From contig NC_043020.1 of the NCBI RefSeq assembly GCF_006345805.1, positions 20,646,001 to 20,710,000 of the forward strand: a stretch of DNA of 64,000 nucleotides, written 5' to 3'. Source of the stretch: Octopus sinensis. Taxonomy: Eukaryota. This document shows, one piece after another, positions 1,650-53,221 of the stretch. The first letter of the stretch is position 1. Each line of letters opens with the position of its first letter. A program made the translations under genes and the position numbers. A model generated the notes under the pieces. It was not told the DNA's origin. It was given only the letters and a program-made list of their open reading frames with translations, and did no database searches.

Positions 1650-2720
1650 GAATGAATGGTAACATGCAAGAAAGGAATACTTCATTAGGAAACAGGAAAA
1701 CAGCTTGTAAATATTTTTTTCCCAGTGAAGAATTTGCTACTCAATACAGATGAGTGATATCAGGGTAATAGGTAGGACTTTATGACGTAAGACAACCTAG
1801 AGAAGGAATAGAAGTTTAAATGTCCCCAGCTAGATGTAGGGTTAAAGAAATATTAACTGACAAGTATCACAGGAAATGAGAGGAAACAGAGACTTATGGA
1901 GGATAACTATAAATTTTTACTTGCTGCACTCCACAGACCACATGTATGGATGGAGCAAGATTCTAACAGACAGATGATGACTTGGTGGTGGAATAGTTAA
2001 ACAGATAGATCCATAAAGGCTACAAGACAAACCTAGAAAGATTGGAAGAGAAGTATGAAGCAATACCAGGCTGCTAAGAAAGATGTCAGACATCAGGTGT
2101 ATATAACACAGAGAAAAGCTGAATGTAATATTTTGTAATGAGAAGATCAGAGATGTTTCAAACAGGGATGCAATATATCAGCACAAATCAAGATATCACT
2201 GGCAAAACAGATATATAGAATGATAACAATGTATTTGCCATCACTGACAATTAGAAAAAAGAGAAATATTACCACAAAAGGTCGTTGAACAAAAAGACTG
2301 CATTAGAGATAGAGGACCAGGTCCAAGTAGACCCAAAAGAAGGACCAGCTATTGAAATTAACAGTCATATGGATAAGCATACAGTTAAGAATATGAAGAC
2401 AGAAAAAGTAGCCGGACTATCAAGAACAGTTACAGTGAGGCTGAAAATATTTGACAGTGTAGAAGACATGCTATCCCAACTTATGCATAGTCATTTACAT
2501 AGTAGAAGGATGAATCATATTTAATGAATTGTATAGCAGGGCACAGGAGATTCTCTATAAGGACATCAAACTGACCCAAATTATGAAAGTAAAATGAGAA
2601 TTAATTTAGATGAGATACTGTTTGAGTTTATGCCAGATTATGCCAGAATTTGCTAACAAAACTAGGTGTGGATGAATGGTTTGTGGAAGATATGCAAACC
2701 ATATACAGATATGCAGTCAG
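1650..2720 (+). mobile_element. Highly decayed RTE LINE ORF fragment
   Basis: Remnants match the younger RTE copies in this window: TGGTGGTGGAAT (WWWN), KVAGLSRTVTVRLKI (cf. KAPGPSGITAEMLK), GATGAGATACTGTTTGAGTTTATGCCAG (cf. DEMQFGFVPG). Many stops; boundaries approximate. Confidence 0.55.
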
Positions 2721-3399
2721 CATAATTAAAAAACTAATAAATTTAGAGAGGAATTAAGAGTGCAGATAGATACTGTTTATTACAGTTTTCTAAGTAGTAC
2801 AAAAACTACCTACACGTTAAAAATGAACAAACTGAACATGTAAGAAATTTCTATTTAAAACCATCTCCTAAACTACTAAAGCACCATTACAAACTTTTAG
2901 GCATACAAAGAGACTAAGCAATGAGTAAACAGAGTAATATGCAGTGTGATCCTCCAGTTTGTAGGATATATAATACTATTATAACAATGGATTTGTGGAT
3001 CACATCAAATAACATGCCAAAAACTGCCTGATGATACAGAGCAACACAAACAGCCTTTCCAAGAGTTAACATGAAGGAACAAAGATGAAGCAATATAAAA
3101 GAATCCAGTTTATTACACAAATAATTATTGCTACCAAATAATTTTCAATGTCACTCAGTTGTTGCCAGCTGCTCTAATACTTAAAAATAGTTAAAATATG
3201 TCAATATTTCCATATTCAGACATAATTTAAAGAACTATTGTGAAACTCCAAGAGAATACTTGCTGCTAAGTCAGTGATTGATTACAATAATTTAGTATAA
3301 TGTTGAGAAGCAACAGGTGTTTTTAAGAATGGTGGAAGATAGCAAGAATTCCAATAAGATTTCTTTGATGCAAAGTTGGTGAATACATTAGCATTTTCT

Positions 3400-5470
3400 T
3401 TAAAACACCATTCATTGCAACAATCAAGTCTTGTAAATTTAACTTATACAGAGGCAAATATGATGGAATGGATACTAAAACAGTTTAGAAGTTGGATTCA
3501 GAACTACTTGACTTTAAGTTACATCTTGGTCTGCAGCACATTGAGCAAGAGTCTTCAAATGTAGCATCAGATTGATGGAAACTGCATGAAAGCATATCAT
3601 ATTATGAATGTGTGTGTGTTTGTAAAAACAACTGATATTGTTATATGTATTACAGATAACTCGCCAAATGCTCCAAATCATACAGGCAAGTTTGAAGACT
3701 GCCTCACAAAGATAGAAGCGTTCATCAAACTAGAGCAACACATCAGTGTATTCCTTTTGGGTGATTTCAACTTCCCCAACATGGGATGGCCTGAGGTCCT
3801 AATGCTCTCAGGAATGACACGCTGCCAACAAGAACAGGTGAAGTCCTTGCTCAACTTTACCAATGCTTCATTCATTGGTAAAGTTGGCATATTGTGCTCC
3901 AACCAACCAGGGCAAGTTATGGTGCCATGTAAAGAGCACTTAGCACACTCTGTGAAGAGGCTGGAATTAAGAAGGACATCCAGCATTAGAAACCAGGCAA
4001 AAACAGACTATGGATTCTGGTATAGCACCTAGCCATGCCAGCTCCTATCAAACTATCCAATCCATGCCAGCATGGAAAACATGTTAAATGATGATAATGA
4101 TGATGATGATGATCTCTGCTCCACAGACAATATGGATATCATCCATAATGTAAAAGTGACATAGACATTAGTCTTGGATTACAACATAAAGCTGTCAATG
4201 TATAGACCAAAAGCACCAGGAGACATACAGCCAATACGAAGCACCTGAAAGCTCTCCAGTCTGAACTCTCATAAAGCAAACTGGAAATTGATTCAGAAAG
4301 AGATCCTCAAACAAGATTGGCCTAAATGTCTCCCCACACAAGACATTGACATGAAACTCAAATTGTTCATGCCCATAACGCAAGCCACATGCAACAAATC
4401 TGTTACAGAGCACAAGGCCAACACACACGAGAACAAGATCCCTAGAGAGGGGAAAATACTTATGAGACAACAGACTAAGATTGTGAACTGCCTGAACATC
4501 TCAAATGTAGTGAAAAGTCCCACCTGAAAATAAGTGTTGCAGATTAAGAAAAATCTACAACAATCCCATGAAAAAGAAATAGCAGACAAGGAGACCTGGG
4601 TTATAGAAAATACTAAGTTAAGCCTTAAAGCTTTCTTCAACTAGCCATACAAACAGCCTCAGTATGCTACAATATAGGGCTCTTCTTCCAAAAGGATGGC
4701 TCCCTCATAGAAAACCCAATGAAGATAAGTGAAATACTGAACAAATAGTTCAAAAGTGCTTTCACTACCCACTTGGGATACAGGCAAGTGAACAAACCCG
4801 TGGAGTTCTTTGCCACTACATAATAATTGATTACATCAACATTAAAGAAGATGTAATACTGGCCGAAGATGAGATTAACATAAACTTAGCTGCTGACACT
4901 GACAGATTCCCAGCAATCCTTCTGGAAACATGTAACTGAGTCCTCGCAAAACCACTGCAGCTTCTTTTTCAGAGCTTCCCTACAAGTGGTAAGCTCCCAG
5001 GCAAACTGAAGGAGAGAATAATATATATATGCTATTCACAAAGGAGGACGCAGAGCAGATGCTAAAAATTACAGGCTTATCTCTCTGACCTCACATATCA
5101 GCAAAGTGATGGAATGAATAGACCACAGGAAACTAATTGCTTTCCTTTAAGAGAATGACTTGATGATTGACACCCAGCACAGTTTTCAACAGGGAGAAGC
5201 TGCATGACACAGCTCTTACAGTACTACAACTGAGTGTTAAAGCAGCTGCTCAACAACTCAAATGTAGGCATGATGTATCTTAACTTTGCAAAAGCCTTTG
5301 ATAAAGTCAACCATGATATATGTCACAAACTGCATGATCTCAGTATAGTCAGAAAACTTAGAGAGTGGCTACATGACTTTCTAAAAGATAAAAATCAGGT
5401 AGTGGTGGCCAATGGAGCCACCTCTAAGGAAACAAATAGTGAGTGAAATTCCACTAGACACTGTCTTACG
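3400..5470 (+). mobile_element. Decayed CR1-type LINE (endonuclease plus N-terminal RT), truncated at the GVPQG motif
   Basis: APE motif VFLLGDFNFP (ORF 3586-4032); RT motif YLNFAKAFDKVNH...WLHDFLKDKNQVVVANG (5234-5446); ends at an 'SEIPLDTVL' relic. An old RTE 3' tail ending in (GAT)n is inserted at ~3917-4112 (absent from the sister copy at 19.2 kb). Confidence 0.8.
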
Positions 5471-8300
5471 TTTTCTATTGCAGATCTGCCTAGGTTCAAC
5501 CTCTTTTGGTGTTGGAACATTGAATAAGTCATAACAAACTTCTAGTGGTATTTCTTCTCTTTCTTTGGTGTGTCAAATGTTTGTGCTCTCCTATTTGACC
5601 TTTTACTATGTATATCATACTGCCTTTTCTTTTCATCACTATGCCATCCTCCCAACCTTATCTTCCATTCTTATATATTTTGAAATGAACTTAATCTCTC
5701 ACATTAAAATACTTTGTTGTGTTTCTTGGGTTTTCCCTATAACTAAAAAACTTAGTTAACAATTAATCAAAAATTGATTTTATCTTCCAAGCAAATGTCA
5801 GGTCTGCAGATGACTTGCATGAACAGGTGTTCAGGTTAGGTGTTAAACCCTTAAAAAGTTTCTGATTTTTTTAGTGCTTGCTTAAATATGTCTATGAAGC
5901 TTTCTGCTTACCCATTTGATCTTGGGTAGTACAGGAGAGTAGAGATGTGATTGACTGCACATCTCTCACAGAAATTTTTAAATTTGTACCCCAAAAACTG
6001 CGATCTGTATCTGATACTACAGTGTCTGGGACACCGTATCATGCAAAACATTTCATGAAGGAACCTTATTGTTACCTTCAAGGTTGGCCACTTGGTATAG
6101 CTGTCTATTATGGTCAGGTAATAAGTGCAGTTTACTGGTCCAGCAAAATCTATATGTAGCCTGGATCATGGACTGTCTGCCTTTAGCCACAATTGGAATT
6201 TCACTGGTGGTGATTTTGCTGCAAGAACACAACCTCTGCAGGGTTTCATCAGTTGTTCAATATCACAGTCCATAGTAGGCCAATAGACCTAACTCCTCAT
6301 TACTGATTTCATTCTTGAAATCCTTGGATGTCCCATATGAAATTCACTTAATATATACTTTTGTAGTGAGGCTGGTACTACAACTCTTTGTGCATACATC
6401 AATACATTATCATACAGAGAAAAATGGTTCGCATTTGTGTTATGTATATTTTTATTTTCTTTTACCTTCAACATTTCTTTCATCTTTGCAATTAATTAGT
6501 CATTCTCCAATTTTAATTTTATATCTTGAACAGTTACTGGCAGCTCCCAAATGACGTTACACAAAGTGTTTTTTAATTTTCCAGCAATCACGGTATCTTT
6601 GAATAGCCCTGTATTTTTTGGAATTAGCCTTGGTAAACAATCCACATGGCCTAACTTCCTGGATGGCATATACTCCATCTTAAAGTTGTAATTCAACAAT
6701 ATCATATCCCAGCATTGTCACCTATTTGCAACATGGGTAGGAATTCCTTTCTTCAAACCAAAAGTTGATAATAATGGTCAGTGATAACTTTGTAACCAAA
6801 AACGTCTACTATAAAAAAATCTGTGAAATTTCTTCATGGCAAAAATGATCGCTAGAGCTTCTTTCTCTATTTGACTATAGTTTTTCTCTGCTGCTATCAG
6901 AGAATGAGAGGCATGAACCACCATCTTCATATTACCATCTTTATATTTGTGTAGCATTACTGCTCCTATGCTGTATTCAGATGTATCAGAAGCTGCAACA
7001 ATCTCTGCTGCAAGATCGAAATGAGCCAGCGACAAATCCAATATTAATATTTTCTTAATATTGTTAAACGTCTTTTGACAATTATTTGATCAATTCCACT
7101 TCAGGTATTACTACAAAATGTAATGTTGCTTACCATTTCACCTAAGAAGTATAATCTTTCACTTGTGATGCCTAGCACACTTTTCAATGTTTTCTTTAGT
7201 GTAGGTTTCCCAATTTTCTTTCACATGTCAGCATCAATAACTGTAATGTTGCTACCTGTGTTTGGTTGTAGTTTCATTTTTGCATTGTCTATTTTTACAT
7301 ACATATTTTTGGGGTGTCGTCACGACTTTCCATTGAGCAAACCTTTTTAGAAGAATTTTTTTTTCCAACTTTTTTAGTTTCACTATGCACTGCCAGCTTT
7401 TATGTCCTATTTTTCGACAACTAAAACATTTCCAAATTTAATTTTAAATGGACAGTCTTTCTTAAAATTCAGACCTCCACACCCATAGCATGGATTTGGT
7501 CATAACATTCTTTTTTCTTTTATTTATTCCAGGTTAACATGTCTGTACTTGAAAGAAACTTTTTTCTTCAATTTTCTTTACATCCTGTTGCAAGTTGATA
7601 ATTCTTTGACATTCCTATGCTACTGCCTGCAGGGTTAAATTCTGGTCTCCCTGTTCTAGTTTTGTAAGAATCTGTGCATGTATTTTTGCATCTTTGTTTG
7701 CTGTCAAACCTTGCACAAAGATGAGGCATTTAAACACATCAGGAGATAATTCCTTCAGTTTAAATTTTTTGCACATTCTATTTACAATTCCAGCATAACT
7801 GACAAAATATTCCTCCTCTTCTTTTACTAAGTTCAAACACTCCCAGTGAGTATTAAACAGGAAACTCTTATCTCTGAACATTTTGGATAGCAATTCAATT
7901 GTTTCCTTGAAACAAATTTCGTTTGTTTATTTAGGCAGTATTTTTCATGTTCTGAAGGAGCTAATTTTCATAACAGTAGTCTCACTTTTTCACTGTCCAT
8001 CCAACACTTGCATTCTTCCTTGAAGATTTCTATCATATCTTCTGAAGTATGCCAAAAATGGGTTATAACTAAATTCCGCTTGCCACCTGGTGAAAACAAA
8101 CTTGCAGTGTTTCCTGAGTGCTTTAAACATGACTCCACCAACTGTTTGTGTGGTAGTTGTTGCTCTAACTCCTGTTTCTGCTGCTTCTGCAAATGTAATA
8201 TGCCAGAAAATAGGTCTTCCGTAATTAATGAACTTTTTGTATCATAAAAAATTGTTAATGACCAATATAAGCTCCGAATCATGACCTCACATGGCAGTTG
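5470..8300 (-). mobile_element. Decayed Ty3/Gypsy LTR retrotransposon internal region; RT deleted
   Basis: Gag-like FKCLIFVQGL (7615-7893); zinc knuckles PCYGCGGLNFKKDCP and CFSCRKIGHKSWQC (~7390-7510); protease relic LQPNTGSNITVI; RNase H ASDTSEYSIGAV...NYSQIEKEALAIIFAMKKFH (6778-7041); integrase HMGHP, LHIDFAGP, YGVPDTVVSD. LTRs not found. Confidence 0.9.
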
Positions 8301-8949
8301 TAATTAAATATCACCATCATGCAAGTGATGTGTTTCATTTCATTCTGCCATGAAAACATGTCTAGCCATGGACAAATATCACCTTACAAATTTGTACAAC
8401 CCATGCAAGTATAAAAAAGTGAATGTTAAAATGGTGATGATGATCATACACACACATACAATTAATTTATTCCCTAGGCTATCATGTTTTGACTGACCAA
8501 CTGATTGTCAGAAATGTAACAAAAAGAATCCAAAAACCCAGTCTTTAGTGATAGACGAACAACGATTTCTAACATTTGCGCATGGAGACAATTTTGATAA
8601 GGTAGAGGTAAAACATCAACAGTGGACTTTTTTCAGAAGTCATAAATCTAGTAGTAAGGCAGATGAATAGCTGAGTTGTTTGAGAATACAATAAAATGCA
8701 TTATATTTGCTCCAGTTCTCTGCTCTCTGAGTTCCAGTACTGCTGAGGTCCACTTCACCTTTCATCTTTTCAGTGTTAAAATAGAAAGTACCAGCTAATG
8801 TTGGTACAACTGTTTATCTCTCCACCTGGTACCTCAAGCAATGGTTGTCATATTCTTATGTCTAGTAGTACATCAACAAATATGTCCTGTTTCCAATATA
8901 TAAGGGTTTGACTTAAGGAAGATTTGACTGCTATTTCTATCAGATATAG

Positions 8950-9512
8950 GCTCCTTTGTTTGTTGGTTATCTTACCAACCCCCAGAAGACTAAAGGCAAA
9001 TGCAACTTCTGTGTTCTGACCAATTCTCTCCTGATTGTGCCATTCCACCACAATGATAGCTGTATTTAACTAAGATCATCTTTTGCTGTTACTCTTATCT
9101 CCTAAGCTAAGAAGCATGTGCTGCCATCTGTTGGTGCACAACAGAACAAGTCCGGAAACATTTTGATACCAAATACAATTTTTATTTTTACATATCCAAC
9201 AAAAAAACGATACAAGAGAGGAGACTGTACTATTTGGAAATGTGACGTGCATGAAGATAGCTGGCTGGGGAAAAAAAAAAAAGCAGAGTCAAACAATGTG
9301 ACAGGAAACTGCAGAAGAGGAAGACTGAAGAAGATTGATGATGAAGTGTTTAATTCTGATATGAAGAAGCTAGATGAATATAAGAGATGACACATAATTG
9401 CAACATATGGTGAGATGCTATGCCATTGAGAAAAGCAAAGCTACCCATCAAGAAAAGCAAATGTAACACATCAACAGAGAGAAGTAAACATAAACAGATG
9501 ATGATGATACAA
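8950..9512 (+). mobile_element. Old RTE 3' fragment
   Basis: HEDSWL...GNCRRGRLKKIDDEVFNSDMKKL resembles RTE C-terminus GTCGRGRPRKTWDEVVKHDL; ends in GATGATGAT tail. Confidence 0.5.
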
Positions 9513-9739
9513 GCTCTACTGGAAAGTCATACAACTGATGGGCTTAACTGTAGCAAATTATTGGTTTCAGATTTTGGCACAAGGCCAGCAATTTCAAAAT
9601 GGATGACCACTATTAATGGTTCATCCCTGTTATATAATACTTTCACTTTAATAGTTTCAGTATTAAATTGAAAGTCTCTGCATTACAATAAAGAGATGTT
9701 TTTGTTTCACTTTTAACACGTAATACTGAAATAGTGGAG

Positions 9740-9960
9740 AAGATATGGTATTGCTGTGAGGTCACCCTAGGCAAAATGTTAAAAGGAGAGGCTGCTTTAT
9801 CACAATCACCTAAAAGTCTCAGGGCACTATTTGCAGTATTACTACAGGCATGCGAACTGTGTGATCCGGCCACTCTATGGCTCAAATATAGAGACAACCT
9901 GGCTGAAGACTTTCAGCGCCAAGCTCAACTGCTTTATCTTGACATGGAGGGTATCAGCAA
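9740..9960 (+). mobile_element. Helitron Rep/helicase fragment
   Basis: [42 protein letters not shown] matches the conserved Helitron segment between Rep and the PIF1 helicase (EA...P..LR.LFA.IL..C...DP..LW..Y...L.EDF). Confidence 0.8.
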
Positions 9961-11089
9961 TGAATATATATACACATATATATATATATTTATATATACA
10001 CATATATATACATATATACACATATATACACATACATATATATATATATACATACATATATATATATATACATACATATATATATATATACATACATATA
10101 TATATATACCTACATATATATATATATACATATATATAGATATACCATACATATATATATATATACATACATATATATATATACATACATATATAATTAT
10201 ACATATATATATTATACATACATATATATATATACATATATATATATATATCCATACATATATATATATACATACATATATATACTATAATATACATATA
10301 TATATATATACATACATATATATATATACACATGATATATATATATATACATACATACATTATATATATACATACATACATATATATTATACATACATAC
10401 ATATATATATATACATACATACATATATATATACATACATACATATATATATACATACATACATATATATATAACTACATACATATATATATACATATAT
10501 ACATATATATATACATACATACATATATACATACATACATATATATATGCATACATATATACATACGTACATATATATATACATATATACATACATACAT
10601 ATATACATACATACATATATATATACATACATATATATAGAAATTCGGGGTGAGTACTTGATGATTATAAGCACCTGTGTATACCGTTTGGTGGTGTAGA
10701 TGGTGGATCAATTTACATACATATATATATATATATACATACATATATATATATAATACATACATACATATATATATCATACATATATATATGTATACAT
10801 AGATATATATATTATACATACATATATATATATACATACATATTATATATACATACATATATATATATACATACATTATATATATACATACATATATATA
10901 TATATACACAATATATATATTACTACATATATATATACATACATATATATATACATAATATATATATAATATATACATACATACATATATATATACATAC
11001 ATACATATATACATACATACATATATATTACATACATACATATATTTCTATACATACATTATATATACATACATATATATATACATACA

Positions 11090-11121
<32 letters not shown>

Positions 11122-11968
11122 CATATATACATACATAATATATACATACTATATATATACATACATACATATATACATACATATATATACATACATACAT
11201 ATATACATACATACATAATATATACTACATATATATATACATAATACATATATATATACATATATATATACATACATATATATATATACATACATATATA
11301 CATACATATATATATACATACATATATATTATATAACACATACATATATATAATACACATACATATATATATACATACATATATATATTATATATATACA
11401 TACATATATATATATACATACATATTATATATATATATACATACATATATATATATATACATACATATATATATATATACATACATATATATATATACAT
11501 ACATATATATATATATATTATACATATTATATATATATATATACATACATATATATATACATACATATATTATATATATACATACATATTATATACATAC
11601 ATATATACATATATATTATCATACATATATATATACATACATATATATATATATACATACATATATATATATATAATACATACATATATATATACATACA
11701 TATATAATATATATATACATACATATATATTACATACATATATATATACATACATATATACATACATCATACTATACCACATATATATATATACACATAC
11801 ATATATACATACATATACATATACATACATATATATATATATACACATATATATATACATATATATATACATACATACACATATATATATACATATATAT
11901 ATACATACATATACATATACATACATATATATATACACATATATATATACATATATATATACATACAC

Positions 11969-11999
<31 letters not shown>

Positions 12000-12035
12000 C
12001 ATATATACATATATATATATACATATATACATATA
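9961..12035. repeat. Compound (TA)n/(CATA)n microsatellite, ~2 kb
   Basis: Directly visible; one unique ~73-bp island at 10640-10712. Confidence 0.98.
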
Positions 12036-12480
12036 AATATAGGGAATATATCCAAATTTACAGGAAAAAATCAGATTTAGGATTAAATCCATTTATAGTA
12101 AAATATTATAACATAATTGAGACAAAAACCACACTTGCAAAACAACAAGGAAAGACTTAATCATACATAAAATTTAATAAATAGTCAAAAAAAACCGCCA
12201 CTACAATCGTTTCTTGTCTTGATCGACAATCTTCAGGTGGACTTCCAATCTAAAAAATCTTCAATTTGTTACTTCATAATTGTAACTGAATTGTAAGTAT
12301 GTATTTGATTATCCTTATGTCATAATGTTATTTTTGATATTCTGGTTATTACGATGTATTATTGTTTTTCATAAGAGTGTTTATGTATATGAGATTGGTT
12401 GTGAGTTTTTAATTGTATAATTAATTTATTTATCTGTATGAGTGTGGTGTAAATATTGTTGTATATATCGAGTTTTAGTG
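12035..12480 (-). mobile_element. Penelope-like pseudo-LTR fragment
   Basis: Non-coding AT-rich segment carrying a minimal hammerhead, the known hallmark of PLE pLTRs; boundaries set by the flanking microsatellites. Confidence 0.5.
12198..12240 (-). ncRNA. Minimal type I hammerhead ribozyme
   Basis: Minus strand reads CCAC-CUGAAGA-UUGUC-GAUCAA-GACAA-GAAA-C-GAUU-GUA^GUGG: stem I CCAC/GUGG, core CUGANGA and GAAA, 5-bp stem II, near-palindromic stem III ACGAUUGU, GUA cleavage triplet. Confidence 0.8.
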
Positions 12481-12539
12481 AGTATGTATATGCGTATATG
12501 TGAAGGGAGCATATGTATCTGTTGTGTGTGTGTGTTTTG

Positions 12540-12559
12540 CGTGTGTGTTGTATATATAC

Positions 12560-12592
<33 letters not shown>

Positions 12593-13091
12593 CATATATA
12601 TATAATATATATATACATTATATATATATTAATATATATACATATATATATATACATATATATATACATATACATATATAATACATATATATAACATATT
12701 ATATACATATATATATACATATATATATACATATATATATACATATACATATATATATACATATACATATATATACATATACATATATATATATACTATA
12801 CATATATATATACATATACATATATATATAACATATATATATATATATACATATATATATACTATTATATACATATATACATAATATATACTATACATAT
12901 ATACATATATATATATACATATATATAACATATATACATATATATATACATATATATACATAATATATACATATATACATAATATACATATATATATACA
13001 TATATATATATACATATATATATACATATATATATACATATATAATATACATATATATACATATATATACATATATATAATATATATATAC

Positions 13092-13122
<31 letters not shown>

Positions 13123-13209
13123 CATACATATATACATACATACATATATATATACACACATATATACATACATACATATATACATATATATATATAATAT
13201 ATATACATA

Positions 13210-13252
<43 letters not shown>

Positions 13253-13744
13253 CATATATACATATATATATATACATATATATATATACATACATATATA
13301 TACATATAATATACATATACATATATACATACATATAGACATACATATATACATACATATATACATACATATATACATACATATATACATACATATATAC
13401 ATATATATACATATATACATACATACATATAGACATACATATATACATACATATATACATACATATAAACATACATATATATACATATATACATACATAT
13501 ATATACACATATATACACACATATATATACACATATATACACATATATACATATATACATACATATATATACACATATATATACACATATATATACACAT
13601 ATACATACATATATATACACATATACATACATATATATACACATATACATACATATATATACATATATACATATATACATTACATATATACATATATATA
13701 CATATACATATACATATCATATTACATATACATATATACATATC

Positions 13745-13787
<43 letters not shown>

Positions 13788-13795
13788 TATATATA
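12540..13795. repeat. Compound (TA)n/(TACA)n microsatellite
   Basis: Directly visible. Confidence 0.98.
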
Positions 13796-14513
13796 TCACT
13801 GTTTAAATTCCTACTTCCCATGTTTGCATGGGTTGGATGAGAGTATGTGTGTGTACATACATATAATATGCAAACAAACATTAGAAATATATGAGTGTAT
13901 ATTACTTACAAATATATACATGACAAAGCACCGATATACAAAGACAATTATAGTGAGCGATAACAGAGAACAACATTGATAGAGACAGACCATCACACAC
14001 AAACAAACTGCACTGACATCACCTAGTTATTTCAATTTCTGTCCAGGAGAATTTAAAAAAAAAAAGAGGGCACTGCCCTCCTTGCTTCAGAAACACACCT
14101 ACACATGATGCACCTTATACATATATATATACATACACATAAGCACACACAGACACAGATATATACTAGTGCACACACAAACGGCTCACTTATATTTTTG
14201 TGTATGTATGTGAGAGAGTGTAAATAGAGCAAGTGAAAGATATTCAGATGTGACAGTTAAAGACATAAAAGAAAGGAAGAGAATATAGATGAGGAGAAGG
14301 AGGAAGAGCTAATGGTGTTGGTGGTGAGACGAAGGGAGAGATTAGTGTAAATATGAGTCAGCTTTGTTAGGAAAGTATTAGAATGAGGCCAAGGTCTAAC
14401 TTACAGCTTGGAAAAGCAGAATAGCAAATATAGTAAGAACTGTGCCTGTGCTGCTGGCAATGTTAGTGGTGGTGGTAAAGGAGTAATAATAAGGTGGGAG
14501 ATGGGGTAGAGAG

Positions 14514-14689: not shown

Positions 14690-14905
14690 TATACTTTTCT
14701 ACTCAAGGCACGAGGCCCGAAATTTTTGGGGAGGGTGCCAGGTGATTAGATTGACTCCAGTGCGCAACTGGTACTTAATTTATCGACCCCGAAAGAGTGA
14801 AAGGCAAAGTCGACCTCAGCAGAATATGAACCCCAAATGTAAAGACAGACAAAACACTGCTAAGCATTTTGCTTGGTGTGCTAACGTTTCTGCCAGCTCA
14901 CCGCC
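14690..14905 (-). mobile_element. tRNA-derived SINE, ~210-bp family
   Basis: Same sequence as the array at 38.5-42.5 kb (GACCCCGAAAG...AAAGGCAAAGTCGACCTC; head GGCGGTGAGCTGGCAGAA on minus). Confidence 0.8.
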
Positions 14906-15029
14906 TTATACTCATTATATATATATATGTGTGTCTATATACACACATCACACACACATACATATGTATACATACAAATATATACACACATATATATATA
15001 TATATATAATATATATATATATATATACG

Positions 15030-15240
15030 CGTGTGTATGTGTGTGTATGTGTTTGTCCACCCACCATTGCTTGACAGCCAATGCTGGTGTGTTTATGTCC
15101 CCATAACTTAGCTGTTCGGCAAAAGAGACCGATAGAATAAGTATTAGGCTTACAAAGAATAAGTCCTGGGGTCGATTTGCTCTACTAAAGGCAGTGCTTC
15201 AGTATGGCCGCAGTCAAATGACTGAAACAAGTAAAAAAAA
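15030..15240 (+). mobile_element. SINE (~400-bp family), 3' half
   Basis: GATAGAATAAGTATTAGGCTTACAAAGAATAAGTCCTGGGGTCGATTTG...GACTGAAACAAGTAAAA is shared with copies at 24.1, 28.3, 33.6 and 48.2 kb. Confidence 0.8.
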
Positions 15241-16435
15241 AAAGAAAAAATATATATATATATATATATATACAGACACACATACAGGTAAACTGGTTAT
15301 TATGGGTAGTATATAGTGAAACATATACACAAATGTATATACATGTAAATTACCTACAGTTGACAAAACTTTGAAAACAATGACATTTATAACTGTCTCT
15401 ACATATATTCTGTGTATGTACATATATATTAAATTGGTTGAAGTCATACAGCTGTTTCTGGGATATCCCAAGTGATAGCTGTAGTATTGCTGTAATACTG
15501 CCTGGATTTACCTTGGATTTTAACTAAGGACATTCGGACTAAAATCCATAGAATGAACTTACTCTCTACTCTTCTATTTCATTGCTTATTATCTGTGAAT
15601 TTTCCATGTCTAGATGTTTTATCTGAATATTTCCATGTCTAGATCTGTCATATGTTCTCTACTTGTCTCTGATGACGGAATACCCCATGTTCAGGCATAC
15701 TCACCTATCAGTACCTTTGGGTAGGTTTTCTACCTGGCTGGCACCATTGAAGATGGACGTGGTTGAGGGTTTGTTTGAACCACAATTTTAAAAGCTATCT
15801 GCTGGAACCAAAATTATTTATTTGTTTATGGGGGTTTGGGCTCAAATAACCAAATCAGGGCATATTGACCAAAATTGCCTTTTTGGTGTATTGCAGTCAA
15901 AAATGATTTACTGGTAGGTGCTTTTAAGGGCTCCTCATTTACTCATTTTTTTTTCTCATATGAGGATATGATTGACATCACTTGCAATGATTTTATAGTC
16001 TCTACAAATTAATTTTCAAAAACCAAAATTGCAATTCAGCACTTTGTTGTGTCCATTGTGTCCAACTGCTCAACTTCCTGTTTCAGTTTCACTTTCTTTG
16101 TACAGTCTGCCATTTTGCTGACACAGCATTTTTTCCCTCACTTGTTTGGCGCTTTACCTTCATATTGGTCATTCTCTAAAAGTTGTTATCAATTGATGTT
16201 GTGCCTTGTTGCATGCTTGCATTTTGTTCACTTGTTTTTGAAGTATGTGTGCATCAACAGCAATATTGAATCATTACATGTTTGGGCCAATTGCCATGAG
16301 TTGTTGCAGTTTTATCTGTTTGGGTTGTTCTTTTGACTGGTTTGCATGTGTTTTCTCTAATTTGAGCTCAGGGTGACAAAGCCAATTTTATGCTGATGTA
16401 TTTTCTTTATCTTTTAGGTAGGAAATCAATTCAAA

Positions 16436-18183
16436 ATGAAGTGGAATAACAAAGAAGCATTAGAACTATTTCTTGGTTATACCAAACACTTGCCTAAAAA
16501 CACCAAGAAGGGCAAGAAATGTGATGAAGCAGTGACCATGTTCATAGAGAATCTTCCAAAGCCACCTCCAGACCATTGGTCCATCAGCATGAAATTCTTG
16601 AGAATGTTGGATTCAAAACCTGGCAACAGGAGTTCTCAAAGTGATGTGTCCAAATAGGAGAATTTGGTTTTCTTTGAGCATGTTCAAGCATCAGATAAAG
16701 AAACCAAGAAGCAGACCAAGTGTAACCCTCAGTGATGCACCTTGTTTGAAAAAAACAAGGTCGATTTTGAAAAATGTGGTTTGTTGGGTAGAACAATTTA
16801 CTGAGAAACAGAATGTAACAAAAAAAGTTGCTCTGCAAGTGGTAGTCGATGAATGCAAATGGACTTGGCATTTCTCTGTTAAGCCAACAAAATGCACAAT
16901 TCCTGTTGACAATGCAGTAGCATTAGTCCTGTTACTGTCCTCGTCAGCTGGACTACAACAACACTGTGCTTTGGACAAACCCAGTGCCAAAACAGCACCA
17001 GTTTTGCATGCCCTGTGTTACTTACCAGGTGTGTTGAGGAATGAGATCTTCTTACTGTTGAACTTGAACCATCTTTTGAAGTTATAAGGGATGTGTATCA
17101 GTTAAATGTTCTTCTTGGTGACAAAACTATCACTGTACATTACAAAACAAAGTGCTCAATGGTTGATGGAAAAATGGTCTCCTTGCTTCAAGGTGTCAGT
17201 CAAGTATTCTGTTATCTGTGTAATACATTGCAAGCTGATGCAAACAATGTTAGAGTGATATCTGTAGGCTTTGATATTACGAAGGACTATGCTTCTTGCG
17301 AAACAGAATGGGAAAAACTGTCAGCTGAGGACATTACCAATTCAAGTAGTGAGAGACAAGGACAATGTCATGAGAACATCATCAAAGCTGATCTTTTTTG
17401 CCTTTCTGTTCTTCACTTTCAGCTGAAATCATTGGATTTTGCACAGAAAATTCTCCACTACCTTGGTGGTCAGAAGATCTGGAGTGAGACAGCAAACCTT
17501 AATGTGATGCGATTTCTTGGTTGAACCAAAAAAGAATGCATTGATGCTATCTGTTCCAGTACTGGAATCTTAATGGACTCACCATGTGGTTCAGTGGGGT
17601 ACACCAATACTGGTCCCCTGGCTGATCGGTTCTTCAGTCCAGTTCACCATGATACAATTCTCAGTGACAAAGATCGACAAAACTATTGTACTTTTTGTCA
17701 TTGACAAACATCATGCTCACCATTACACAATCAGTTAATGCAACAAAGAAGGTGCAAGTTGATGCGTTGAAGTAACTGGATAGAGAGCTGATGATGCACA
17801 TGAAGAACATGCTCCTTATCAAGAAGGGGTAGCCTTGGGTGTTGATCATTCCATCTTTCCACAAAATGTGTGTGCATAGCTGGCAGCTCTTTGAGTTAAA
17901 TAGTGGCCAATAAATTGCTAAATGGAGTGAGAGTTGGAATAAACATCTAAGGTCATTTCAAAGTGGTCCTTCTGCAAGATCTTGCTAGCTTTCAATCAAG
18001 GATAACATCCGTGACATCTTCAGAAGAATGTCCATCATGTCACATCCAGCAATTGCTTCAAAACATCCCAGCCCAAGTTGTTCTGTTTGTGGTGAAGTTG
18101 GTCACACAGGCCGTTCTTCAAAACATAACATGGGGTCTGCTTTGACAGAGGAACTATCAAGAATTGAATCACTATATTACTGA
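16436..18183 (+). pseudogene. Decayed Transib/RAG1-like DDE transposase, with internal deletion, stops and frameshifts
   Basis: Ordered motifs: SRPSVTLSD (NBD-like); LWTNPVP/NSTSF..PV (cf. RAG1 KPNSELCCKPL); SMVDGK (2nd catalytic D, cf. Transib TMIDGK); FCYLC (ZnC2); LSVLH; GYTNTGPLADRFF (cf. Transib GNTNDGNTSRRFF); PSFHKMCVH (ZnH2); KWSESWNKH (catalytic E region); DIFRRM..SHP; CSVCGEVGH tail. A splice acceptor TTTTAG ends at 16417, upstream of the ATG. Confidence 0.85.
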
Positions 18184-19189
18184 TTGGTCCATGTTACACA
18201 TATTTATTGTTTAGCATTATTGTTTCAATATTTCTTGTGAATAATAAGTAATCAGTTTTCACAGTTTTGTGCAAATGATTCTGATTTTCTTTGTGAATCA
18301 CAGGGGTGGAGTTTCATTGTATTTTTCTTTGGTGGGGGTAAACTATGGTAAAGTTTCAATCCAGGGATTTGTTGGGAATATTTTCTTTTCGTTATCTTGC
18401 ATTTTGGCTCTTCTTTAATTTTGAAATAAGCAAGACAAAATCCTCCAAACCAGAATCTGACCTTCCTAATAAGATTTTTACTCCATAAAATAGGCTAAAT
18501 ACCAAAAAAGTGCATTTAAGATCAATTATTTCAAGAAATTTATAAGGTTTTGAGTCCATTTTATGTTTCCTGTTTTTATACTTGTTTAATCACATTGGGG
18601 GTCAATAACTACCGATTTTACCCGATTTTGGTTGGTTTTGATGTTTGGTACCCAAACATCAAAACTTTCTGTGTAGCCTTTTAACCCCTTTGAACTGATT
18701 TTTTTCCACAGTTTACATGAAATGTTAAGGATGTCAAATATGTTAGTCTTTAATATGTCAAAATTTGTCATTTAAAAAAAAAATTATGAAGTTTGAGGGG
18801 ATTTTACCAAAAATCTGGGTATTTCTATCAAAAACTTAAATTTTTCATGCATCCCCTATTTTCTCAAATTTAAGTTGGCCTATGCACTCTAGGCTGTGGC
18901 TTGGCTGAAAGACAATAAAAAAATGCTTCTAAATAAGTTCAAACAGAGGTTAAAAATCTTTTTTGTGAAAGAAAATATGTTCAATCTTAAGATACTTAAA
19001 AATAAACGTAAATTTCATTTAAACTGGCCAACTTTAAAGAGCTATAAAAATGTAAACCATACATTATTTTAAACTCAGATTTTTTGCTTTGTAATCTCTT
19101 GAGTTTCGAGAACCAAAAAATATACATTTTAAACATGTGAGAGAAACTTCCAAAAATGATAAATTGCCACTCTGGACACAATATGAGGT

Positions 19190-21050
19190 AGAGTCCCTGC
19201 TCAACTTTACCAATGCTTCATTCATGGAGCAAATTGTGCTCCAATCAAGCAGGACAAATAATATCTCTGCTTCACAAACAATATGGATATCATCCATAAT
19301 GTGAAAGTGATACCAACACTTGGCTTGGATCATAATGTAATAATGCTGACTATGTATGGACCAAAAGCATCTGCAGACATACAATCTATATGAACCACCT
19401 GAAACCTCTCCAGTCTGAATGAACTTTCAGAAAGCAAACTGGAAATTGATTCAGAAAGAGATCCTCAAACAGGATTGGCCTAAATGTCTCTTTACATCAG
19501 ACATTGACATCAAACTCATAGTTTATGTCCACAATGCAAGCCAACAAACACAACAATGAAATCCCTAGGGAGAGGAAAATTTTTATGAGACAACAGACAA
19601 AGATTACAAACTGCCTGAACAAAATCTCAACAGTTGTGAAAAGTCCCACCTGAAAACAACACTGACAGAGATTGAGAAAAGTCTGCAACAATCCCATGAA
19701 ACAGATAAAGAGGCTTGGGTTATAGAAAATAATAAGTTAAACTTTAAAACTTTCTTGAACTTTATCATAGAAATGACCTTAGTATACTGCAAGACAGGGC
19801 CTTCTTCCAAAAGGACAGCCCCCTCACAGAAAACCTAATGTGAATAAGTGAAATACTGAACAGTTCAAAAGTGTTTTCACTATCGCTTTGGGACACAGGC
19901 AAGTGAAACAAACCAGTGAAGTTCTTTACCACTACATAATTAATTACATCAACATTACAGAAGATGTAATACTGACCAAACTCAGCTGCTGGCACTGATG
20001 GGTTCCCAGTAACCCTTCACAAATCATGTAACCGAGTCCTTGAAAAACCACTGCAGTTTCTTTTTCAGAGCTTCCCTGCCAGTTGTAAGCTCCCTGGCAA
20101 ACTGAAGGTAGGAACAATATATCCTATCCACAAAGAAGGAAGCAGAACAGATGTTAAAAATTATAGGTCTATCTCTCAGGCCTCACACATCAACAAAGTT
20201 ATGGAATAAAGTCCGCAGGAAACCAATTTCATTCCTAGAGGAGAATGACTTGATGACCAACACCAGGCATTGTTTATGACCAGGTAGAAGCTGCATGATA
20301 CAGCTCTTACAGCACAACTGGGTGTTAAAGCAGCAATGGTATGATTATGTCACAAGCTGTGTAATTTCAGCATAGTTGTAAAACTTGGAAAGTGGCAATA
20401 AAACGCAGCTGGCTGTCTGGATCCTTCGAAACTTTCTGAATGGGAAAAAAGGAACCATGATGGTCCTCTGGAAGACATATCAGCCACTTAGACTACTGTT
20501 CCCAACCATGGTCACCACACTGTAAAATTAACAGCACAACTTGAAGCAATCCAGCAAAGTTATGAAAAGTTCAATACATGTCAGCTCCTGGAAAAGGCTG
20601 AAAAAGTTAAGACTCTACTCCCTAGAATAAAGGCAGGAAAGATATGCAGTGATATACATATGGAAAATCATGGAAAGAGTTGCAACAAACATTGCTATTG
20701 GACGTTACACAAATAGCAAAATGGAGTACCACAGCATAGTGCCAAAGATCCCAACATTACCATCAGGATACCGAACCAGATACTGCAACAGCTTGGGTTT
20801 CAAGGGCATCCAGCTATTCAATATACTCCCAAAAAGCTTGAAAGGCCTGCATGAGATGGATGTGTCTTCAAAACAAAACTGGATCTCCTCCTGTTATGAG
20901 TTCCAGATGAGCCTACCTCATAGCAGGAAACACAGATGAGAGTAGCATCATCAGATTCCCTCATTCACCAAATACCACATATCAGAGGAGATTTCAAATA
21001 GTGAAAGTGCAGTAAAGCTAACAGCTGTGCCCCAGCATAGATGCAACTCT
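19190..21050 (+). mobile_element. Decayed CR1-type LINE, same family as 3400-5470, internally deleted, 3' end retained
   Basis: Collinear with the first copy (CTCAACTTTACCAATGCTTCATTCAT..., GAAATTGATTCAGAAAGAGATCCTCAAAC); C-terminal IYIWKIME...CNSLGFKGIQLFNILPKSL. Confidence 0.85.
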
Positions 21051-26613: not shown

Positions 26614-26713
26614 NNNNNNNNNNNNNNNNNNNNNNNNNNNNNNNNNNNNNNNNNNNNNNNNNNNNNNNNNNNNNNNNNNNNNNNNNNNNNNNNNNNNNNN
26701 NNNNNNNNNNNNN
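26614..26713. other. Assembly gap (100 N)
   Basis: Run of N. Confidence 1.
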
Positions 26714-28321: not shown

Positions 28322-28446
28322 ATACAAATCGACCCCAGGACTAATTCTTTGTTAGTCTAGTATTTATTCTATCGGTCTCTTTTGCCGAACCGCTAAGTCA
28401 CAGGGATGTAAACACACCAGCATCAGTTGTCAAGCGATGTTGGGGG

Positions 28447-28478
<32 letters not shown>

Positions 28479-28640
28479 GATATATACACACAACTGACTT
28501 CTTTCAGTTTCCGTCTACCAAATCCACTCACAAGACTTTGGTCAGCCTGAAGCTATAGTAGAAGACATTTGACCAAGGTGCCAAGCAGTGAGACTGAACC
28601 CGGAACCATGCGGTTGGTAAGCAAGCTACTTACCACAGTC
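28322..28640 (-). mobile_element. SINE (~400-bp family)
   Basis: Reverse complement of the family, including GGTTCCGGGTTCAGTC head and internal (CA)n. Confidence 0.85.
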
Positions 28641-39834: not shown

Positions 39835-39885
<51 letters not shown>

Positions 39886-42374: not shown

Positions 42375-42412
<38 letters not shown>

Positions 42413-53146: not shown

Positions 53147-53166
53147 TGCATGTGTATATATATATG

Positions 53167-53202
<36 letters not shown>

Positions 53203-53221
53203 CATACATTATACATATATA

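What the first reader, a model, noticed from the sequence alone, without database searches (positions are those of the whole stretch)
16436..18183. RAG1-like/Transib transposase relic with a RAG1L-type C-terminal Cx2Cx3GH tail in an octopus-like genome
Seen: joining frames across stops and shifts gives, in order, an NBD-like segment (SRPSVTLSD...VEQFTEKQNV...IPVDNAVAL), NPVP/NSTSF.PV, SMVDGK, FCYLC, LSVLH, NTGPLADRFF, FHKMCVH, WSESWNKH, DIFRRM, and CSVCGEVGHTGRSS (18079-18120). Established: this motif order defines the Transib/RAG1 core (catalytic D and E, ZnC2, ZnH2), and Cx2Cx3GHx4C is the CTT* motif described for invertebrate RAG1L proteins. Inference: a Transib-like core plus a CTT*-like tail may mark an intermediate single-gene RAG1L lineage. 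No RAG2L/kelch ORF fits in the ~1 kb downstream. The first catalytic D region is missing (deletion near 16940), the last Cys is Ser, and the catalytic E segment appears about 3 residues short, so this copy is dead; intact relatives may exist elsewhere in the genome.
Basis: partly seen in the sequence, partly recalled or inferred. Interest (0 to 1): 0.78.

Follow-up and report, generated by a model that had tools for sequence, protein, structure and literature searches.

The report
Dead Transib transposon copy, knuckle-tailed type
This is a broken, long-dead copy of a Transib "cut-and-paste" transposon, the family related to the RAG1 gene of vertebrate immunity; its zinc-knuckle tail is real but was already described in Transibs in 2022, so the find is ordinary.

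Summary
Intact relatives of 700-723 aa exist (best E=3.7e-191, about 61% identity).

The family is a Transib, not a RAG1L. Its profile scores 130-270 bits against Transibs, including HzTransib, and only 32 bits against BbRAG1L or RAG1. A model of an intact relative matches only Transib/RAG1 structures. Three relatives are single-gene elements of 4-5 kb with CACWGTG-type TIRs and perfect 5-bp duplications, and none has a RAG2L gene.

The family carries the traits that Tao et al. (2022) gave for "Subgroup I" Transibs:
- a segment between ZnC2 and ZnH2 that matches RAG1 alpha11-alpha12;
- a C-terminal Cx2Cx3GH knuckle (CTT1, also called CTT*);
- an NBD with a GRP motif;
- asymmetric two-part TIRs.

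The "intermediate" idea is therefore already published.

This copy is dead: 7 premature stops, 4 frameshifts, a roughly 122-aa deletion that removes the first catalytic Asp, and a 4-aa deletion at the catalytic Glu. The Ser in place of the last Cys is a trait of the clade, not decay. The 3' TIR is at 19146-19185. The 5' end is tentative, at 15291.

The parts
15286..15290 (+). Tentative 5' copy of the 5-bp target-site duplication (AGGTA)
   Evidence: Identical to the 5 nt after the 3' TIR (19186-19190). Of 114 AGGTA sites in the window, only 2 are followed by a sequence this TIR-like. This one is on the right strand, 1145 bp before the ATG, against 970-1115 bp in the intact elements L001 and L007. 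Rough chance about 0.01. Tentative.
15291..15335 (+). Tentative, heavily decayed 5' TIR (AACTGGTTATTATG + 13-nt spacer + GAAACATAT...)
   Evidence: Only 6/14 matches to CACWGTGTGCCCAG. A GAAACA-type second element does sit at the 13-nt spacing seen in the 5' TIRs of L001 and L009. It borders an AT microsatellite and a SINE-like repeat. Inference.
15336..16435 (+). 5' non-coding part of the element
   Evidence: The conserved block TTGAGGGTTTGTTT at 15763-15776 is shared with the 5' regions of the closest relatives L003 and L005. A TTTTAG|GTA about 20 nt before the ATG is also present in L003.
16436..16675 (+). Relic ORF segment A (frame 2): N-terminal helical region, residues 1-81 of P0001; stop at 16655-16657
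   Evidence: tblastn, 44% identity to P0001 1-81; stop mapped.
16698..16928 (+). Relic segment B (frame 3): NBD-like region with GRP motif decayed to SRP (16710-16718), residues about 91-165
   Evidence: 55% identity to P0001 91-178. Relatives carry GRP here, the motif Tao et al. 2022 list as conserved in the NBD.
16927..16929 (+). Junction of the internal deletion of about 122 aa (about 366 bp), with frameshift. Removes part of the DDBD/pre-RNase H region and the first catalytic Asp (GKFGVDGSGSHK)
   Evidence: P0001 residues about 166-287 have no counterpart. Segment B ends at 16928 and segment C starts at 16927 in another frame.
16927..16989 (+). Relic segment C (frame 1): SCYCPRQLDYNNTVLWTNPVP
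   Evidence: Matches P0001 288-308.
16991..17701 (+). Relic segment D (frame 2): RNase H core. Holds the second catalytic Asp (SMVDGK 17156-17173), ZnC2 (FCYLC 17207-17221), the alpha11-alpha12-like segment (17222-17401) and the LH motif (17402-17416). Stops at 17042-17044 and 17522-17524
   Evidence: 58% identity to P0001 309-550. Motif equivalence to HzTransib, BbRAG1L and RAG1 comes from the HMM alignments. The ZnC2-to-LH spacing is 64 residues, against 28-32 in HzTransib-type proteins.
17692..18183 (+). Relic segment E (frame 1): ZnH2 (FHKMCVH 17857-17877), catalytic Glu motif with a 4-aa deletion (WSESWNKH 17923-17946), CTD, the tail knuckle CSVCGEVGHTGRSS (18079-18120) followed by KH (18121-18126), and the stop at 18181-18183. 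Premature stops at 17773, 17830, 17911 and 17986
   Evidence: 65% identity to P0001 548-715; stops mapped.
18184..19145 (+). 3' non-coding part of the element; no second gene
   Evidence: Collinear DNA homology with the 3' region of relative L003, up to the end of that contig. No ORF longer than 61 aa.
19146..19185 (-). 3' TIR. Read on the minus strand: CATATTGTGTCCAG-AGTG-GCAATTTATCATTTTTGGAAGT
   Evidence: This is the only match in the window to CACWGTGTGCCCAGA within 3 mismatches. It lies 1002 bp after the stop, as in L001 (999 bp). It aligns with the 3' TIRs of L010, L009 and L007 and with the end of L003: a 14-mer, a 4-nt spacer and a GGAATTTAT-type element.
19186..19190 (+). 3' copy of the putative 5-bp target-site duplication (AGGTA). 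Flanking LINE-derived sequence starts here
   Evidence: From 19186 the sequence is a 75-78% copy of the LINE fragment at 3815-5369.

Best explanation
Window about 15291-19185 is a decayed, immobile copy of a single-gene Transib DNA transposon. It lies in a transposon-rich stretch of an animal genome, and its 3' end abuts a LINE fragment.

Its family encodes a transposase of about 710 aa with a RAG1-core-like fold:
- an N-terminal helical region;
- an NBD with a GRP motif;
- an RNase H fold with an Asp-Asp-Glu triad;
- ZnC2 and ZnH2 zinc ligands, separated by a segment the length of RAG1 alpha11-alpha12;
- a C-terminal zinc knuckle, Cx2Cx3GH.

Intact family members sit between asymmetric two-part terminal inverted repeats. 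Each repeat has a CAC(A/T)GTG heptamer-like end and an A/T-rich second element, set 9-10 bp further in at the 5' end than at the 3' end. They make 5-bp target duplications.

By analogy with HzTransib and BbRAGL (inference), the active enzyme cuts by nicking and hairpin formation, and the knuckle helps to hold the inner TIR element.

The copy in the window can do none of this. It has lost the first catalytic Asp in a deletion of about 122 aa and carries 7 premature stops and 4 frameshifts. Its TIRs are eroded.

The family belongs with the Transibs that keep 'ancestral' RAG1L-like traits (Subgroup I characters of Tao et al. 2022). It is not a RAG1L.
For: Sequence homology: the relic translation hits intact 700-723 aa proteins at E=3.7e-191 and maps collinearly from Met1 to the stop.

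Transib versus RAG1L: the family profile scores HzTransib 6pqn at E=3.8e-37 (131 bits), against RAG1 at 3e-7 and BbRAG1L at 4e-7. A local hmmsearch gives 130-270 bits for all Transib lineages tested, including MleTransib_3931 (178 bits), and 32 bits for BbRAG1L.

Fold: the AlphaFold model of P0001 (pLDDT 78, pTM 0.67) finds only HzTransib, RAG1 and BbRAG1L among its 49 significant PDB hits. The top hit is 6pqx_A at E=2.5e-21, TM 0.82 normalised to the target.

Catalytic and zinc residues align with D600, D708, E962, C727/C730 and H937/H942 of RAG1 (alignments).

Transposon ends in relatives:
- L001 9031-13147, TSD CATCT/CATCT;
- L007 2018-5973, TSD TAATG/TAATG;
- L009 4518-9524, TSD CATTT/CATTT.
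All three have the TIR CAC(A/T)GTGTGCCCAG and a second element at a spacer of 13 (or 10) nt at the 5' end against 4 (or 0) nt at the 3' end.

Single gene: no other long ORF lies inside these elements, and no kelch hit lies nearby.

Subgroup I traits: hhalign to MleTransib_3931 runs without a break through the ZnC2-LH segment and the knuckle to the C-terminus (probability 99.9%, 28% identity, 432 columns). HzTransib-type proteins split at profile positions 394-443.

Window 3' TIR. Lesions.
Against: The 5' TIR and the target duplication of this copy are only tentative: 6/14 matches in the terminal 14-mer.

The nick-hairpin chemistry and a DNA-binding role for the tail are carried over from HzTransib and BbRAG1L. 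They were not tested for this family.

In the window's own clade the fourth zinc ligand of the knuckle is not Cys. A His 7-8 residues after the GH His may replace it (inference), or the knuckle may be degenerate.

The neighbour-joining tree does not place the clade with the Subgroup I reference MleTransib_3931. It places it, at 54% bootstrap, next to the HzTransib-type clade. So assignment to Subgroup I rests on characters, not on phylogeny.

Pfam's RAG1 model stays just under its cut-off even for intact relatives (24.8 against 25 bits).
Confidence: 0.9

Rival explanations
1. It is a remnant of a RAGL transposon (RAG1L plus RAG2L) that lost RAG2L, or of a single-gene RAG1L lineage intermediate between Transib and RAGL.
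For: The tail motif Cx2Cx3GH is the one described for invertebrate RAG1L CTT* (PMC7204232). The ZnC2-ZnH2 segment has RAG1-like length and aligns continuously with BbRAG1L. An NBD GRP motif is present in relatives. The 4/13-nt TIR spacers equal those reported for AanRAGL (PMC9435367).
Against: The family scores about 32 bits against BbRAG1L and RAG1, against 130-270 bits for Transibs. No RING or N-terminal zinc domains are present. Complete elements of relatives hold one gene. All of these 'RAG1L-like' traits are already documented in Subgroup I Transibs and are said to occur in Transibs in PMC10462144.
Confidence: 0.04
2. It is a pseudogene of a host gene domesticated from a Transib, not a transposon copy.
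For: Many intact, fairly conserved ORFs exist in different samples. The 5' TIR of the window copy is not clear.
Against: Three relatives have TIRs with perfect 5-bp duplications in unrelated flanks. Non-coding 5' and 3' parts and the 3' TIR are conserved between the window and its relatives. The window copy sits among other transposon debris and next to a LINE fragment. Several relatives are themselves frameshifted or truncated copies.
Confidence: 0.04
3. The motif series is a chance assembly obtained by hopping between frames in AT-rich DNA.
For: No Pfam family matched the relic pieces on their own.
Against: E=3.7e-191 against intact proteins, and a collinear tblastn match over the whole protein in the expected order.
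Confidence: 0

Closest known systems
Subgroup I Transib transposons (e.g. MleTransib_3931 of Mnemiopsis leidyi; Tao et al. 2022, Natl Sci Rev, PMC9435367)
   Same: Single-gene element. The core is collinear, including the alpha11-alpha12-equivalent segment between ZnC2 and ZnH2. A C-terminal CTT1/CTT* knuckle directly follows the CTD, and even the acidic ...EE..L.S.F/Y C-terminus aligns. The NBD has a GRP motif. TIRs are asymmetric and two-part, with 5-bp TSDs.
   Different: Only about 28% identity to MleTransib_3931. The neighbour-joining tree puts the window's clade (97% support) outside the Mle clade (93%) and weakly next to the HzTransib-type clade. In the window's clade the fourth knuckle ligand is not Cys, and a conserved His lies 7-8 residues after the GH His.
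HzTransib (Helicoverpa zea Transib, PDB 6PQN/6PQX; Subgroup II)
   Same: Best solved-structure relative by sequence (131 bits) and by fold (E=2.5e-21, TM 0.82 on the target). Same DDE and zinc ligands, heptamer-like TIR ends and 5-bp TSD.
   Different: HzTransib lacks about 35-48 residues between ZnC2 and the LH motif: the alignment breaks at profile positions 394-443. It also has no CCHC knuckle. By Tao et al. it has a different tail (CTT2).
RAG1L of RAGL transposons (e.g. BbRAG1L of ProtoRAG, PDB 6B40)
   Same: Same core fold, a tail motif of the same type, and an alpha11-alpha12 segment.
   Different: Very low sequence similarity (32 bits). No N-terminal RING or zinc-finger region, and no RAG2L partner gene. 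Protein of about 710 aa, which from my own recollection (not checked here) compares with about 900-1100 aa for RAG1L.
Vertebrate RAG1 core
   Same: Fold; catalytic and zinc residues; a heptamer CACAGTG identical to the first 7 nt of the TIRs of L007 and L009; a two-part signal with unequal spacers.
   Different: RAG1 is a domesticated host gene that works with RAG2 and has an acidic tail instead of a knuckle. Identity in structural alignments is 13-17%.

Membership tests
Transib superfamily (DNA transposons) | Transposase homologous to the RAG1 core, closer to Transib transposases than to RAG1/RAG1L | tested here: met
   Profile against PDB: HzTransib E=3.8e-37, RAG1 and BbRAG1L about 1e-7. 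Local hmmsearch: 130-270 bits against 32 bits. Fold search returns only Transib/RAG1 hits.
Transib superfamily (DNA transposons) | Asp-Asp-Glu triad plus ZnC2/ZnH2 ligands | tested here: met
   Met in the intact relatives (invariant D253, D367, E631, C382, C385, H604, H609; equivalences). In the window copy the first Asp is deleted. The second Asp, the Glu, both Cys and both His are still readable.
Transib superfamily (DNA transposons) | 5-bp target-site duplications and TIRs beginning 5'-CAC with an RSS-heptamer-like end | tested here: met
   Relatives L001, L007 and L009 have perfect 5-bp TSDs and the TIR CAC(A/T)GTGTGCCCAG. In the window copy the 3' TIR is recognisable but decayed (CAT...), and the 5' TIR and TSD AGGTA are tentative.
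Transib superfamily (DNA transposons) | Single gene, no RAG2-like partner | tested here: met
   No second long ORF inside the elements of L001 and L007. No kelch or PHD Pfam hits in neighbouring called genes. The window's 3' part has no ORF over 61 aa.
Subgroup I Transibs (Tao et al. 2022) | alpha11-alpha12-equivalent segment in the zinc-binding domain | tested here: met
   ZnC2-to-LH spacing is 64 residues, against 28-32 in Hz and Epu Transibs. The alignment to MleTransib_3931 and BbRAG1L is continuous and the alignment to HzTransib is split. Also present in the window relic (17222-17401).
Subgroup I Transibs (Tao et al. 2022) | CTT1 (CTT*) tail with Cx2Cx3GHx4C | tested here: inconclusive
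   The motif is at the right place. The window's clade has Cx2Cx3GHx3S plus a variable residue and a conserved His at +7/+8. The outer clade members P0023 and P0033, and many other long-form Transibs, have the full motif. A tail-only search finds only generic zinc knuckles.
Subgroup I Transibs (Tao et al. 2022) | Asymmetric TIRs | tested here: met
   Second TIR element at spacers of 13 against 4 nt (L001, L009) or 10 against 0 nt (L007). The window 3' TIR has the 4-nt form.
Subgroup I Transibs (Tao et al. 2022) | Phylogenetic placement inside Subgroup I | tested here: inconclusive
   Neighbour-joining tree with 200 bootstraps: the window clade is at 97% and is separate from the Mle clade (93%) and the Hz/Epu clade (100%). 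Deep nodes are at 54% or less. No ML software or full reference set was available.
RAG1L / RAGL transposons | N-terminal non-core region (Cys pairs, RING/ZDD) | tested here: not met
   No RING or zinc-finger Pfam hit in ten intact relatives. The N-terminus is a helical region of about 90 aa.
RAG1L / RAGL transposons | Closely linked RAG2L (kelch plus PHD) gene inside the same TIRs | tested here: not met
RAG1L / RAGL transposons | Greater sequence similarity to RAG1/RAG1L than to Transib | tested here: not met
   32 bits against 130-270 bits.

The most novel reading that the evidence does not exclude
The clade to which this relic belongs may be the closest living sister of the canonical HzTransib-type (Subgroup II) Transibs while still keeping the alpha11-alpha12 segment, the GRP-type NBD, 14/23-like asymmetric TIRs and a C-terminal knuckle. 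In that knuckle the fourth ligand appears to have moved from Cys (+5) to His (+7/+8). If so, it would fix the order in which Subgroup II lost these RAG1L-like features and would offer a natural CCHC-to-CCHH variant of the TIR-clamping tail. The relic itself adds nothing beyond showing that such elements once lived in this (probably cephalopod) genome.
Probability: 0.25. Interest if true: 0.35.

Novelty: new member of a known kind. Interest (0 to 1): 0.22.

Why it matters
For the window itself it matters little: this is one more dead DNA transposon in a repeat-rich region.

At family level it adds a well-defined clade to the Transibs that keep RAG1L-like traits. About 45 protein clusters fall in it, all from unnamed marine or metagenome assemblies. 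These Transibs are used to argue how the RAG recombinase arose.

Three complete elements found here (L001, L007, L009) give clean TIR and TSD anatomy: a CACAGTG-type heptamer, and a second element at spacings that differ by 9-10 bp between the two ends. Those elements, not the relic, would be the useful material for anyone testing how a knuckle-tailed Transib reads asymmetric ends.

The work also corrects the idea that a knuckle tail marks RAG1L ancestry.

Tried and rejected
1. Pfam on the four relic pieces gave no RAG1 hit. Intact relatives reach only 15-24.8 bits against PF12940, cut-off 25. Pfam alone therefore neither confirms nor refutes.

2. Generic inverted-repeat searches around the relic and around relatives, and a CAC...GTG plus TSD scan of the window, found nothing convincing. 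The TIRs emerged only from the same scan on relatives' loci.

3. CACAATGCAA (L003, position 3209) and CACCATGCAA (L005, position 283) were considered as TIR ends of the closest relatives. They were rejected because homology between the window and L003 continues past that point.

4. CACAATTTT at window 15781 was considered as the 5' TIR. It was rejected because it lies inside a 5' block conserved with L003 and L005 that extends further upstream.

5. I suspected that the 3' TIR candidate (19171-19185) was just part of the neighbouring LINE, since blastn started the LINE match at 19165. That suspicion was rejected. The Transib 3' homology with L003 runs to 19174, and the next 11 nt complete the TIR as in L007, L009 and L010. 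Clear LINE identity begins at 19186.

6. A search of solved structures with the tail alone gave only generic CCHC knuckles such as Air2, so specific homology of the tail to the BbRAG1L CTT* cannot be shown by sequence.

7. The first tree attempt timed out. It was redone with my own distance code.

8. A second protein search with the family profile, made to find named or NCBI-annotated members such as cephalopod proteins, found none.

9. A literature search for Transib together with octopus found no paper describing such elements in cephalopods.
Full report
**1. The observation**

Window 16436-18183 on the + strand holds the remains of one long reading frame, spread over three frames. This is not a chance pattern. 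The joined translation finds 30 proteins in the 5.8-billion-protein collection, the best at E=3.7e-191 and about 61% identity, and several of them are intact at 700-723 aa.

Mapped back by tblastn, P0001 aligns collinearly with the window:

| P0001 residues | Window coordinates | Frame |
|---|---|---|
| 1-81 | 16436-16675 | 2 |
| 91-165 | 16698-16928 | 3 |
| 288-308 | 16927-16989 | 1 |
| 309-550 | 16991-17701 | 2 |
| 548-715 | 17692-18180 | 1 |

So the relic covers the whole gene from Met1 to the natural stop. There is no other copy in the window.

**2. State of this copy**

The copy is dead.
- There are seven premature stops, at 16655, 17042, 17522, 17773, 17830, 17911 and 17986.
- There are four frameshifts.
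- An internal deletion at about 16928 removes residues about 166-287 of the intact protein. The lost stretch includes GKFGVDGSGSHK, which carries the first catalytic Asp.
- A 4-aa in-frame deletion shortens WSESPVESWNKH to WSESWNKH at the catalytic Glu.
- The NBD motif GRP has become SRP (16710-16718).
- The second Asp (SMVDGK), both ZnC2 Cys (FCYLC), both ZnH2 His (FHKMCVH) and an E-S-W-N-K remain readable.

**3. What the family is**

A profile of ten intact relatives was searched against all PDB sequences. It finds HzTransib at E=3.8e-37 (131 bits), and zebrafish and mouse RAG1 and amphioxus BbRAG1L only at about 1e-7 (about 30 bits). In those alignments the family's D253, D367 and E631 match the catalytic D600, D708 and E962 of RAG1. 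Its C382/C385 and H604/H609 match the ZnC2 and ZnH2 ligands.

A local hmmsearch with the same profile gives:
- 130-270 bits for every Transib lineage tested, among them MleTransib_3931 (178 bits; sequence from the supplement of PMC9435367), EpuTransib_3173 (133 bits) and HzTransib (130 bits);
- 32 bits for BbRAG1L.

An AlphaFold2 model of P0001 (mean pLDDT 78, pTM 0.67) has 49 significant PDB matches. All are HzTransib, RAG1 or BbRAG1L, and the best is 6pqx_A (E=2.5e-21, TM 0.82 on the target). Pfam's vertebrate-based RAG1 model stays just below its threshold (at most 24.8 bits against 25), and no RING or other N-terminal zinc domain is detected.

The family is large. The exhaustive search found 3396 representatives at E≤0.001 and 353 at E≤1e-30.

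**4. Anatomy of intact elements**

Three relatives on longer contigs show complete transposons with perfect 5-bp target duplications:

| Locus | Element | Length | TSD |
|---|---|---|---|
| L001 | 9031-13147 | 4117 bp | CATCT |
| L007 | 2018-5973 | 3956 bp | TAATG |
| L009 | 4518-9524 | 5007 bp | CATTT |

All begin and end with CAC(A/T)GTGTGCCCAG. The first seven bases of L007 and L009 are the RSS heptamer CACAGTG.

A second, A/T-rich element follows (GGAAACAATTAA, GGAAT(A/T)(A/T)AT or GTGAGAAAAAAT). Its spacer is longer at the 5' end than at the 3' end:
- 13 nt at the 5' end against 4 nt at the 3' end in L001 and L009;
- 10 nt against 0 nt in L007.

The ends are therefore asymmetric by 9-10 bp, about one helical turn. 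This is the same 4/13 arrangement that Tao et al. report for AanRAGL.

Each element holds one gene, with about 1 kb of non-coding DNA on either side. No second long ORF lies inside, and no kelch or PHD gene lies nearby.

**5. Ends of the window copy**

The only match in 64 kb to the TIR 15-mer within three mismatches is at 19171-19185 on the minus strand, 1002 bp after the stop. The corresponding distance in L001 is 999 bp.

I first doubted this candidate, because a LINE-like repeat starts close by. Two results settled it:
- The 3' non-coding DNA of the window is collinear with that of relative L003 right up to the end of that contig, which falls inside the TIR.
- The 40 nt at 19146-19185, read on the minus strand, are CATATTGTGTCCAG-AGTG-GCAATTTATCATTTTTGGAAGT. 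They align with the 3' TIRs of L010, L009 and L007, including the 4-nt spacer and the second element.

Clear identity to the LINE copy at 3815-5369 starts at 19186. The transposon either inserted into a LINE, or a 5'-truncated LINE landed at its tip.

The 5' end is less certain. The 5 nt after the 3' TIR are AGGTA, and an AGGTA lies at 15286-15290, 1145 bp before the ATG. It is followed by a poor 14-mer (6/14 matches) and a GAAACA element at the 13-nt spacing typical of 5' TIRs. Only 2 of 114 AGGTA sites in the window are followed by anything this TIR-like. That gives a rough chance of about 0.01 for one at the right place and on the right strand. The region borders an AT microsatellite and SINE-like repeats.

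A conserved 5' non-coding block at 15763-15776 is shared with L003 and L005. It shows that the element reaches at least that far upstream.

**6. The tail and the 'intermediate' idea**

The motif Cx2Cx3GHx4C is indeed the one described for the CTT* of invertebrate RAG1L (Martin et al. 2020, PMC7204232). Tao et al. (2022, PMC9435367) then divided Transibs into two subgroups. They showed that Subgroup I Transibs carry this same tail (renamed CTT1), an alpha11-alpha12-equivalent segment in the zinc-binding domain, a GRP-containing NBD and asymmetric TIRs. [quoted passage not shown] Martin et al. [quoted passage not shown]

I tested these traits here.
- The ZnC2-to-LH distance is 64 residues in the window relic and its relatives, against 28-32 in HzTransib-type proteins.
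- Alignments to HzTransib-type proteins break at profile positions 394-443, whereas those to MleTransib_3931 and BbRAG1L run through.
- hhalign to MleTransib_3931 is continuous over 432 columns, through the knuckle to the very C-terminus.
- GRP is present in the NBD of relatives.
- The TIRs are asymmetric (section 4).

The family therefore has the Subgroup I character set.

A neighbour-joining tree recovers three well-supported groups: the window's clade (97%), the clade of MleTransib_3931 (93%) and the HzTransib/Epu clade (100%). It joins the window's clade to the HzTransib-type clade with only 54% support. The formal subgroup placement is unresolved. Placement far from BbRAG1L is not in doubt.

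**7. A correction on the tail**

All nine close intact relatives also lack that Cys (S, A, I or F at that position) and share a His seven residues after the GH His. This is H696 in P0001, nearly invariant, and the window has it at 18124-18126. More distant clade members (P0023, P0033) and many other long-form Transibs have the canonical Cys and no such His.

This looks like a ligand swap from CCHC to CCHH, which is inference. It is a clade trait, not a lesion. The tail on its own matches only generic zinc knuckles in the PDB, so its kinship to CTT* rests on position and motif.

**8. How it works**

Shown:
- homology, fold, and conserved catalytic and zinc residues;
- TIRs, 5-bp duplications and single-gene structure in relatives;
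- loss of function in this copy.

Inferred from HzTransib and BbRAGL work cited in the papers above:
- The intact enzyme pairs the two unequal ends.
- It nicks at the CAC end and forms hairpins on the flanks.
- It integrates with 5-bp staggered cuts.
- The NBD and the C-terminal knuckle hold the inner TIR element.

The relic can neither encode the enzyme nor, with its eroded ends, be expected to move.

**9. What could not be tested**

All members of the clade in the protein collection come from ENA, Logan or JGI metagenome-type assemblies and carry no names. I could therefore not name any host, nor show intact copies in cephalopods. The origin of the window could not be checked either. The SINE-like repeats look to me like cephalopod repeats, but that is memory only. 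No paper in the library describes Transibs in octopus.

**10. Verdict**

This is a dead copy of a Transib transposon of the knuckle-tailed, alpha11-alpha12-retaining kind that is already in the literature. It is a new member of a known kind, of low interest in itself. There is a modest family-level point: clean asymmetric TIR anatomy and a possible CCHH tail variant.

Noticed in passing
window 9964-13796: A microsatellite of about 3.8 kb, (AT)n/(ATAC)n, GC 14-18%, lies a few kb upstream of the relic.
   Followed up: partly
window 14694-14908 and 15009-15244; copies at 38915-42377, 28325-28486, 33637-33870, 48354-48569: Two SINE-like repeat families. The first has at least 10 copies, clustered almost in tandem at 38.9-42.4 kb. 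The second ends in an A-rich tail just before the tentative 5' end of the Transib.
   Followed up: partly
window 19186-20396 and 3815-5369: Two copies (75-78% identical) of a LINE-like element. One starts exactly at the outer edge of the Transib 3' TIR, so the Transib either inserted into a LINE or was hit at its tip by a 5'-truncated LINE.
   Followed up: partly
window 37559-37951 (-): Fragment of a mariner/Tc1-type transposase (Pfam PF01359, E=3.7e-26).
   Followed up: partly
window 58699-60612 (-); 51890-57222 (+): A 637-aa reverse-transcriptase ORF (PF00078, E=1.7e-32), and several repeated RT fragments that end in a PHD/C1-like Cys-rich stretch. The region has higher GC (44-48%) than the rest of the window.
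   Followed up: partly
window 26614-26713: A run of 100 N, which is an assembly gap.
   Followed up: yes
window 16411-16420; L003 about 448-456: TTTTAG|GTA about 20 nt before the start codon, both in the relic and in relative L003. It may be the acceptor of a 5'-UTR intron, which would explain the 5' non-coding part of about 1 kb.
   Followed up: no
window 18635-18665: A 31-nt near-perfect hairpin (GTTTTGATGTTTGGTACCCAAACATCAAAAC) inside the relic's 3' non-coding part. It is absent from the aligned region of L003.
   Followed up: no
relatives P0001-P0034 (tails); window 18079-18126: Across the clade the knuckle has either Cys five residues after the GH His, or His seven to eight residues after it, but never both. 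This suggests a CCHC-to-CCHH ligand swap.
   Followed up: partly
L010 8005-8826: Directly outside the 3' TIR of relative L010 lies a tandem array with a unit of about 33 nt that reads as a repeated SHYRLPWVKLV in translation. It is flank, not part of the element.
   Followed up: no
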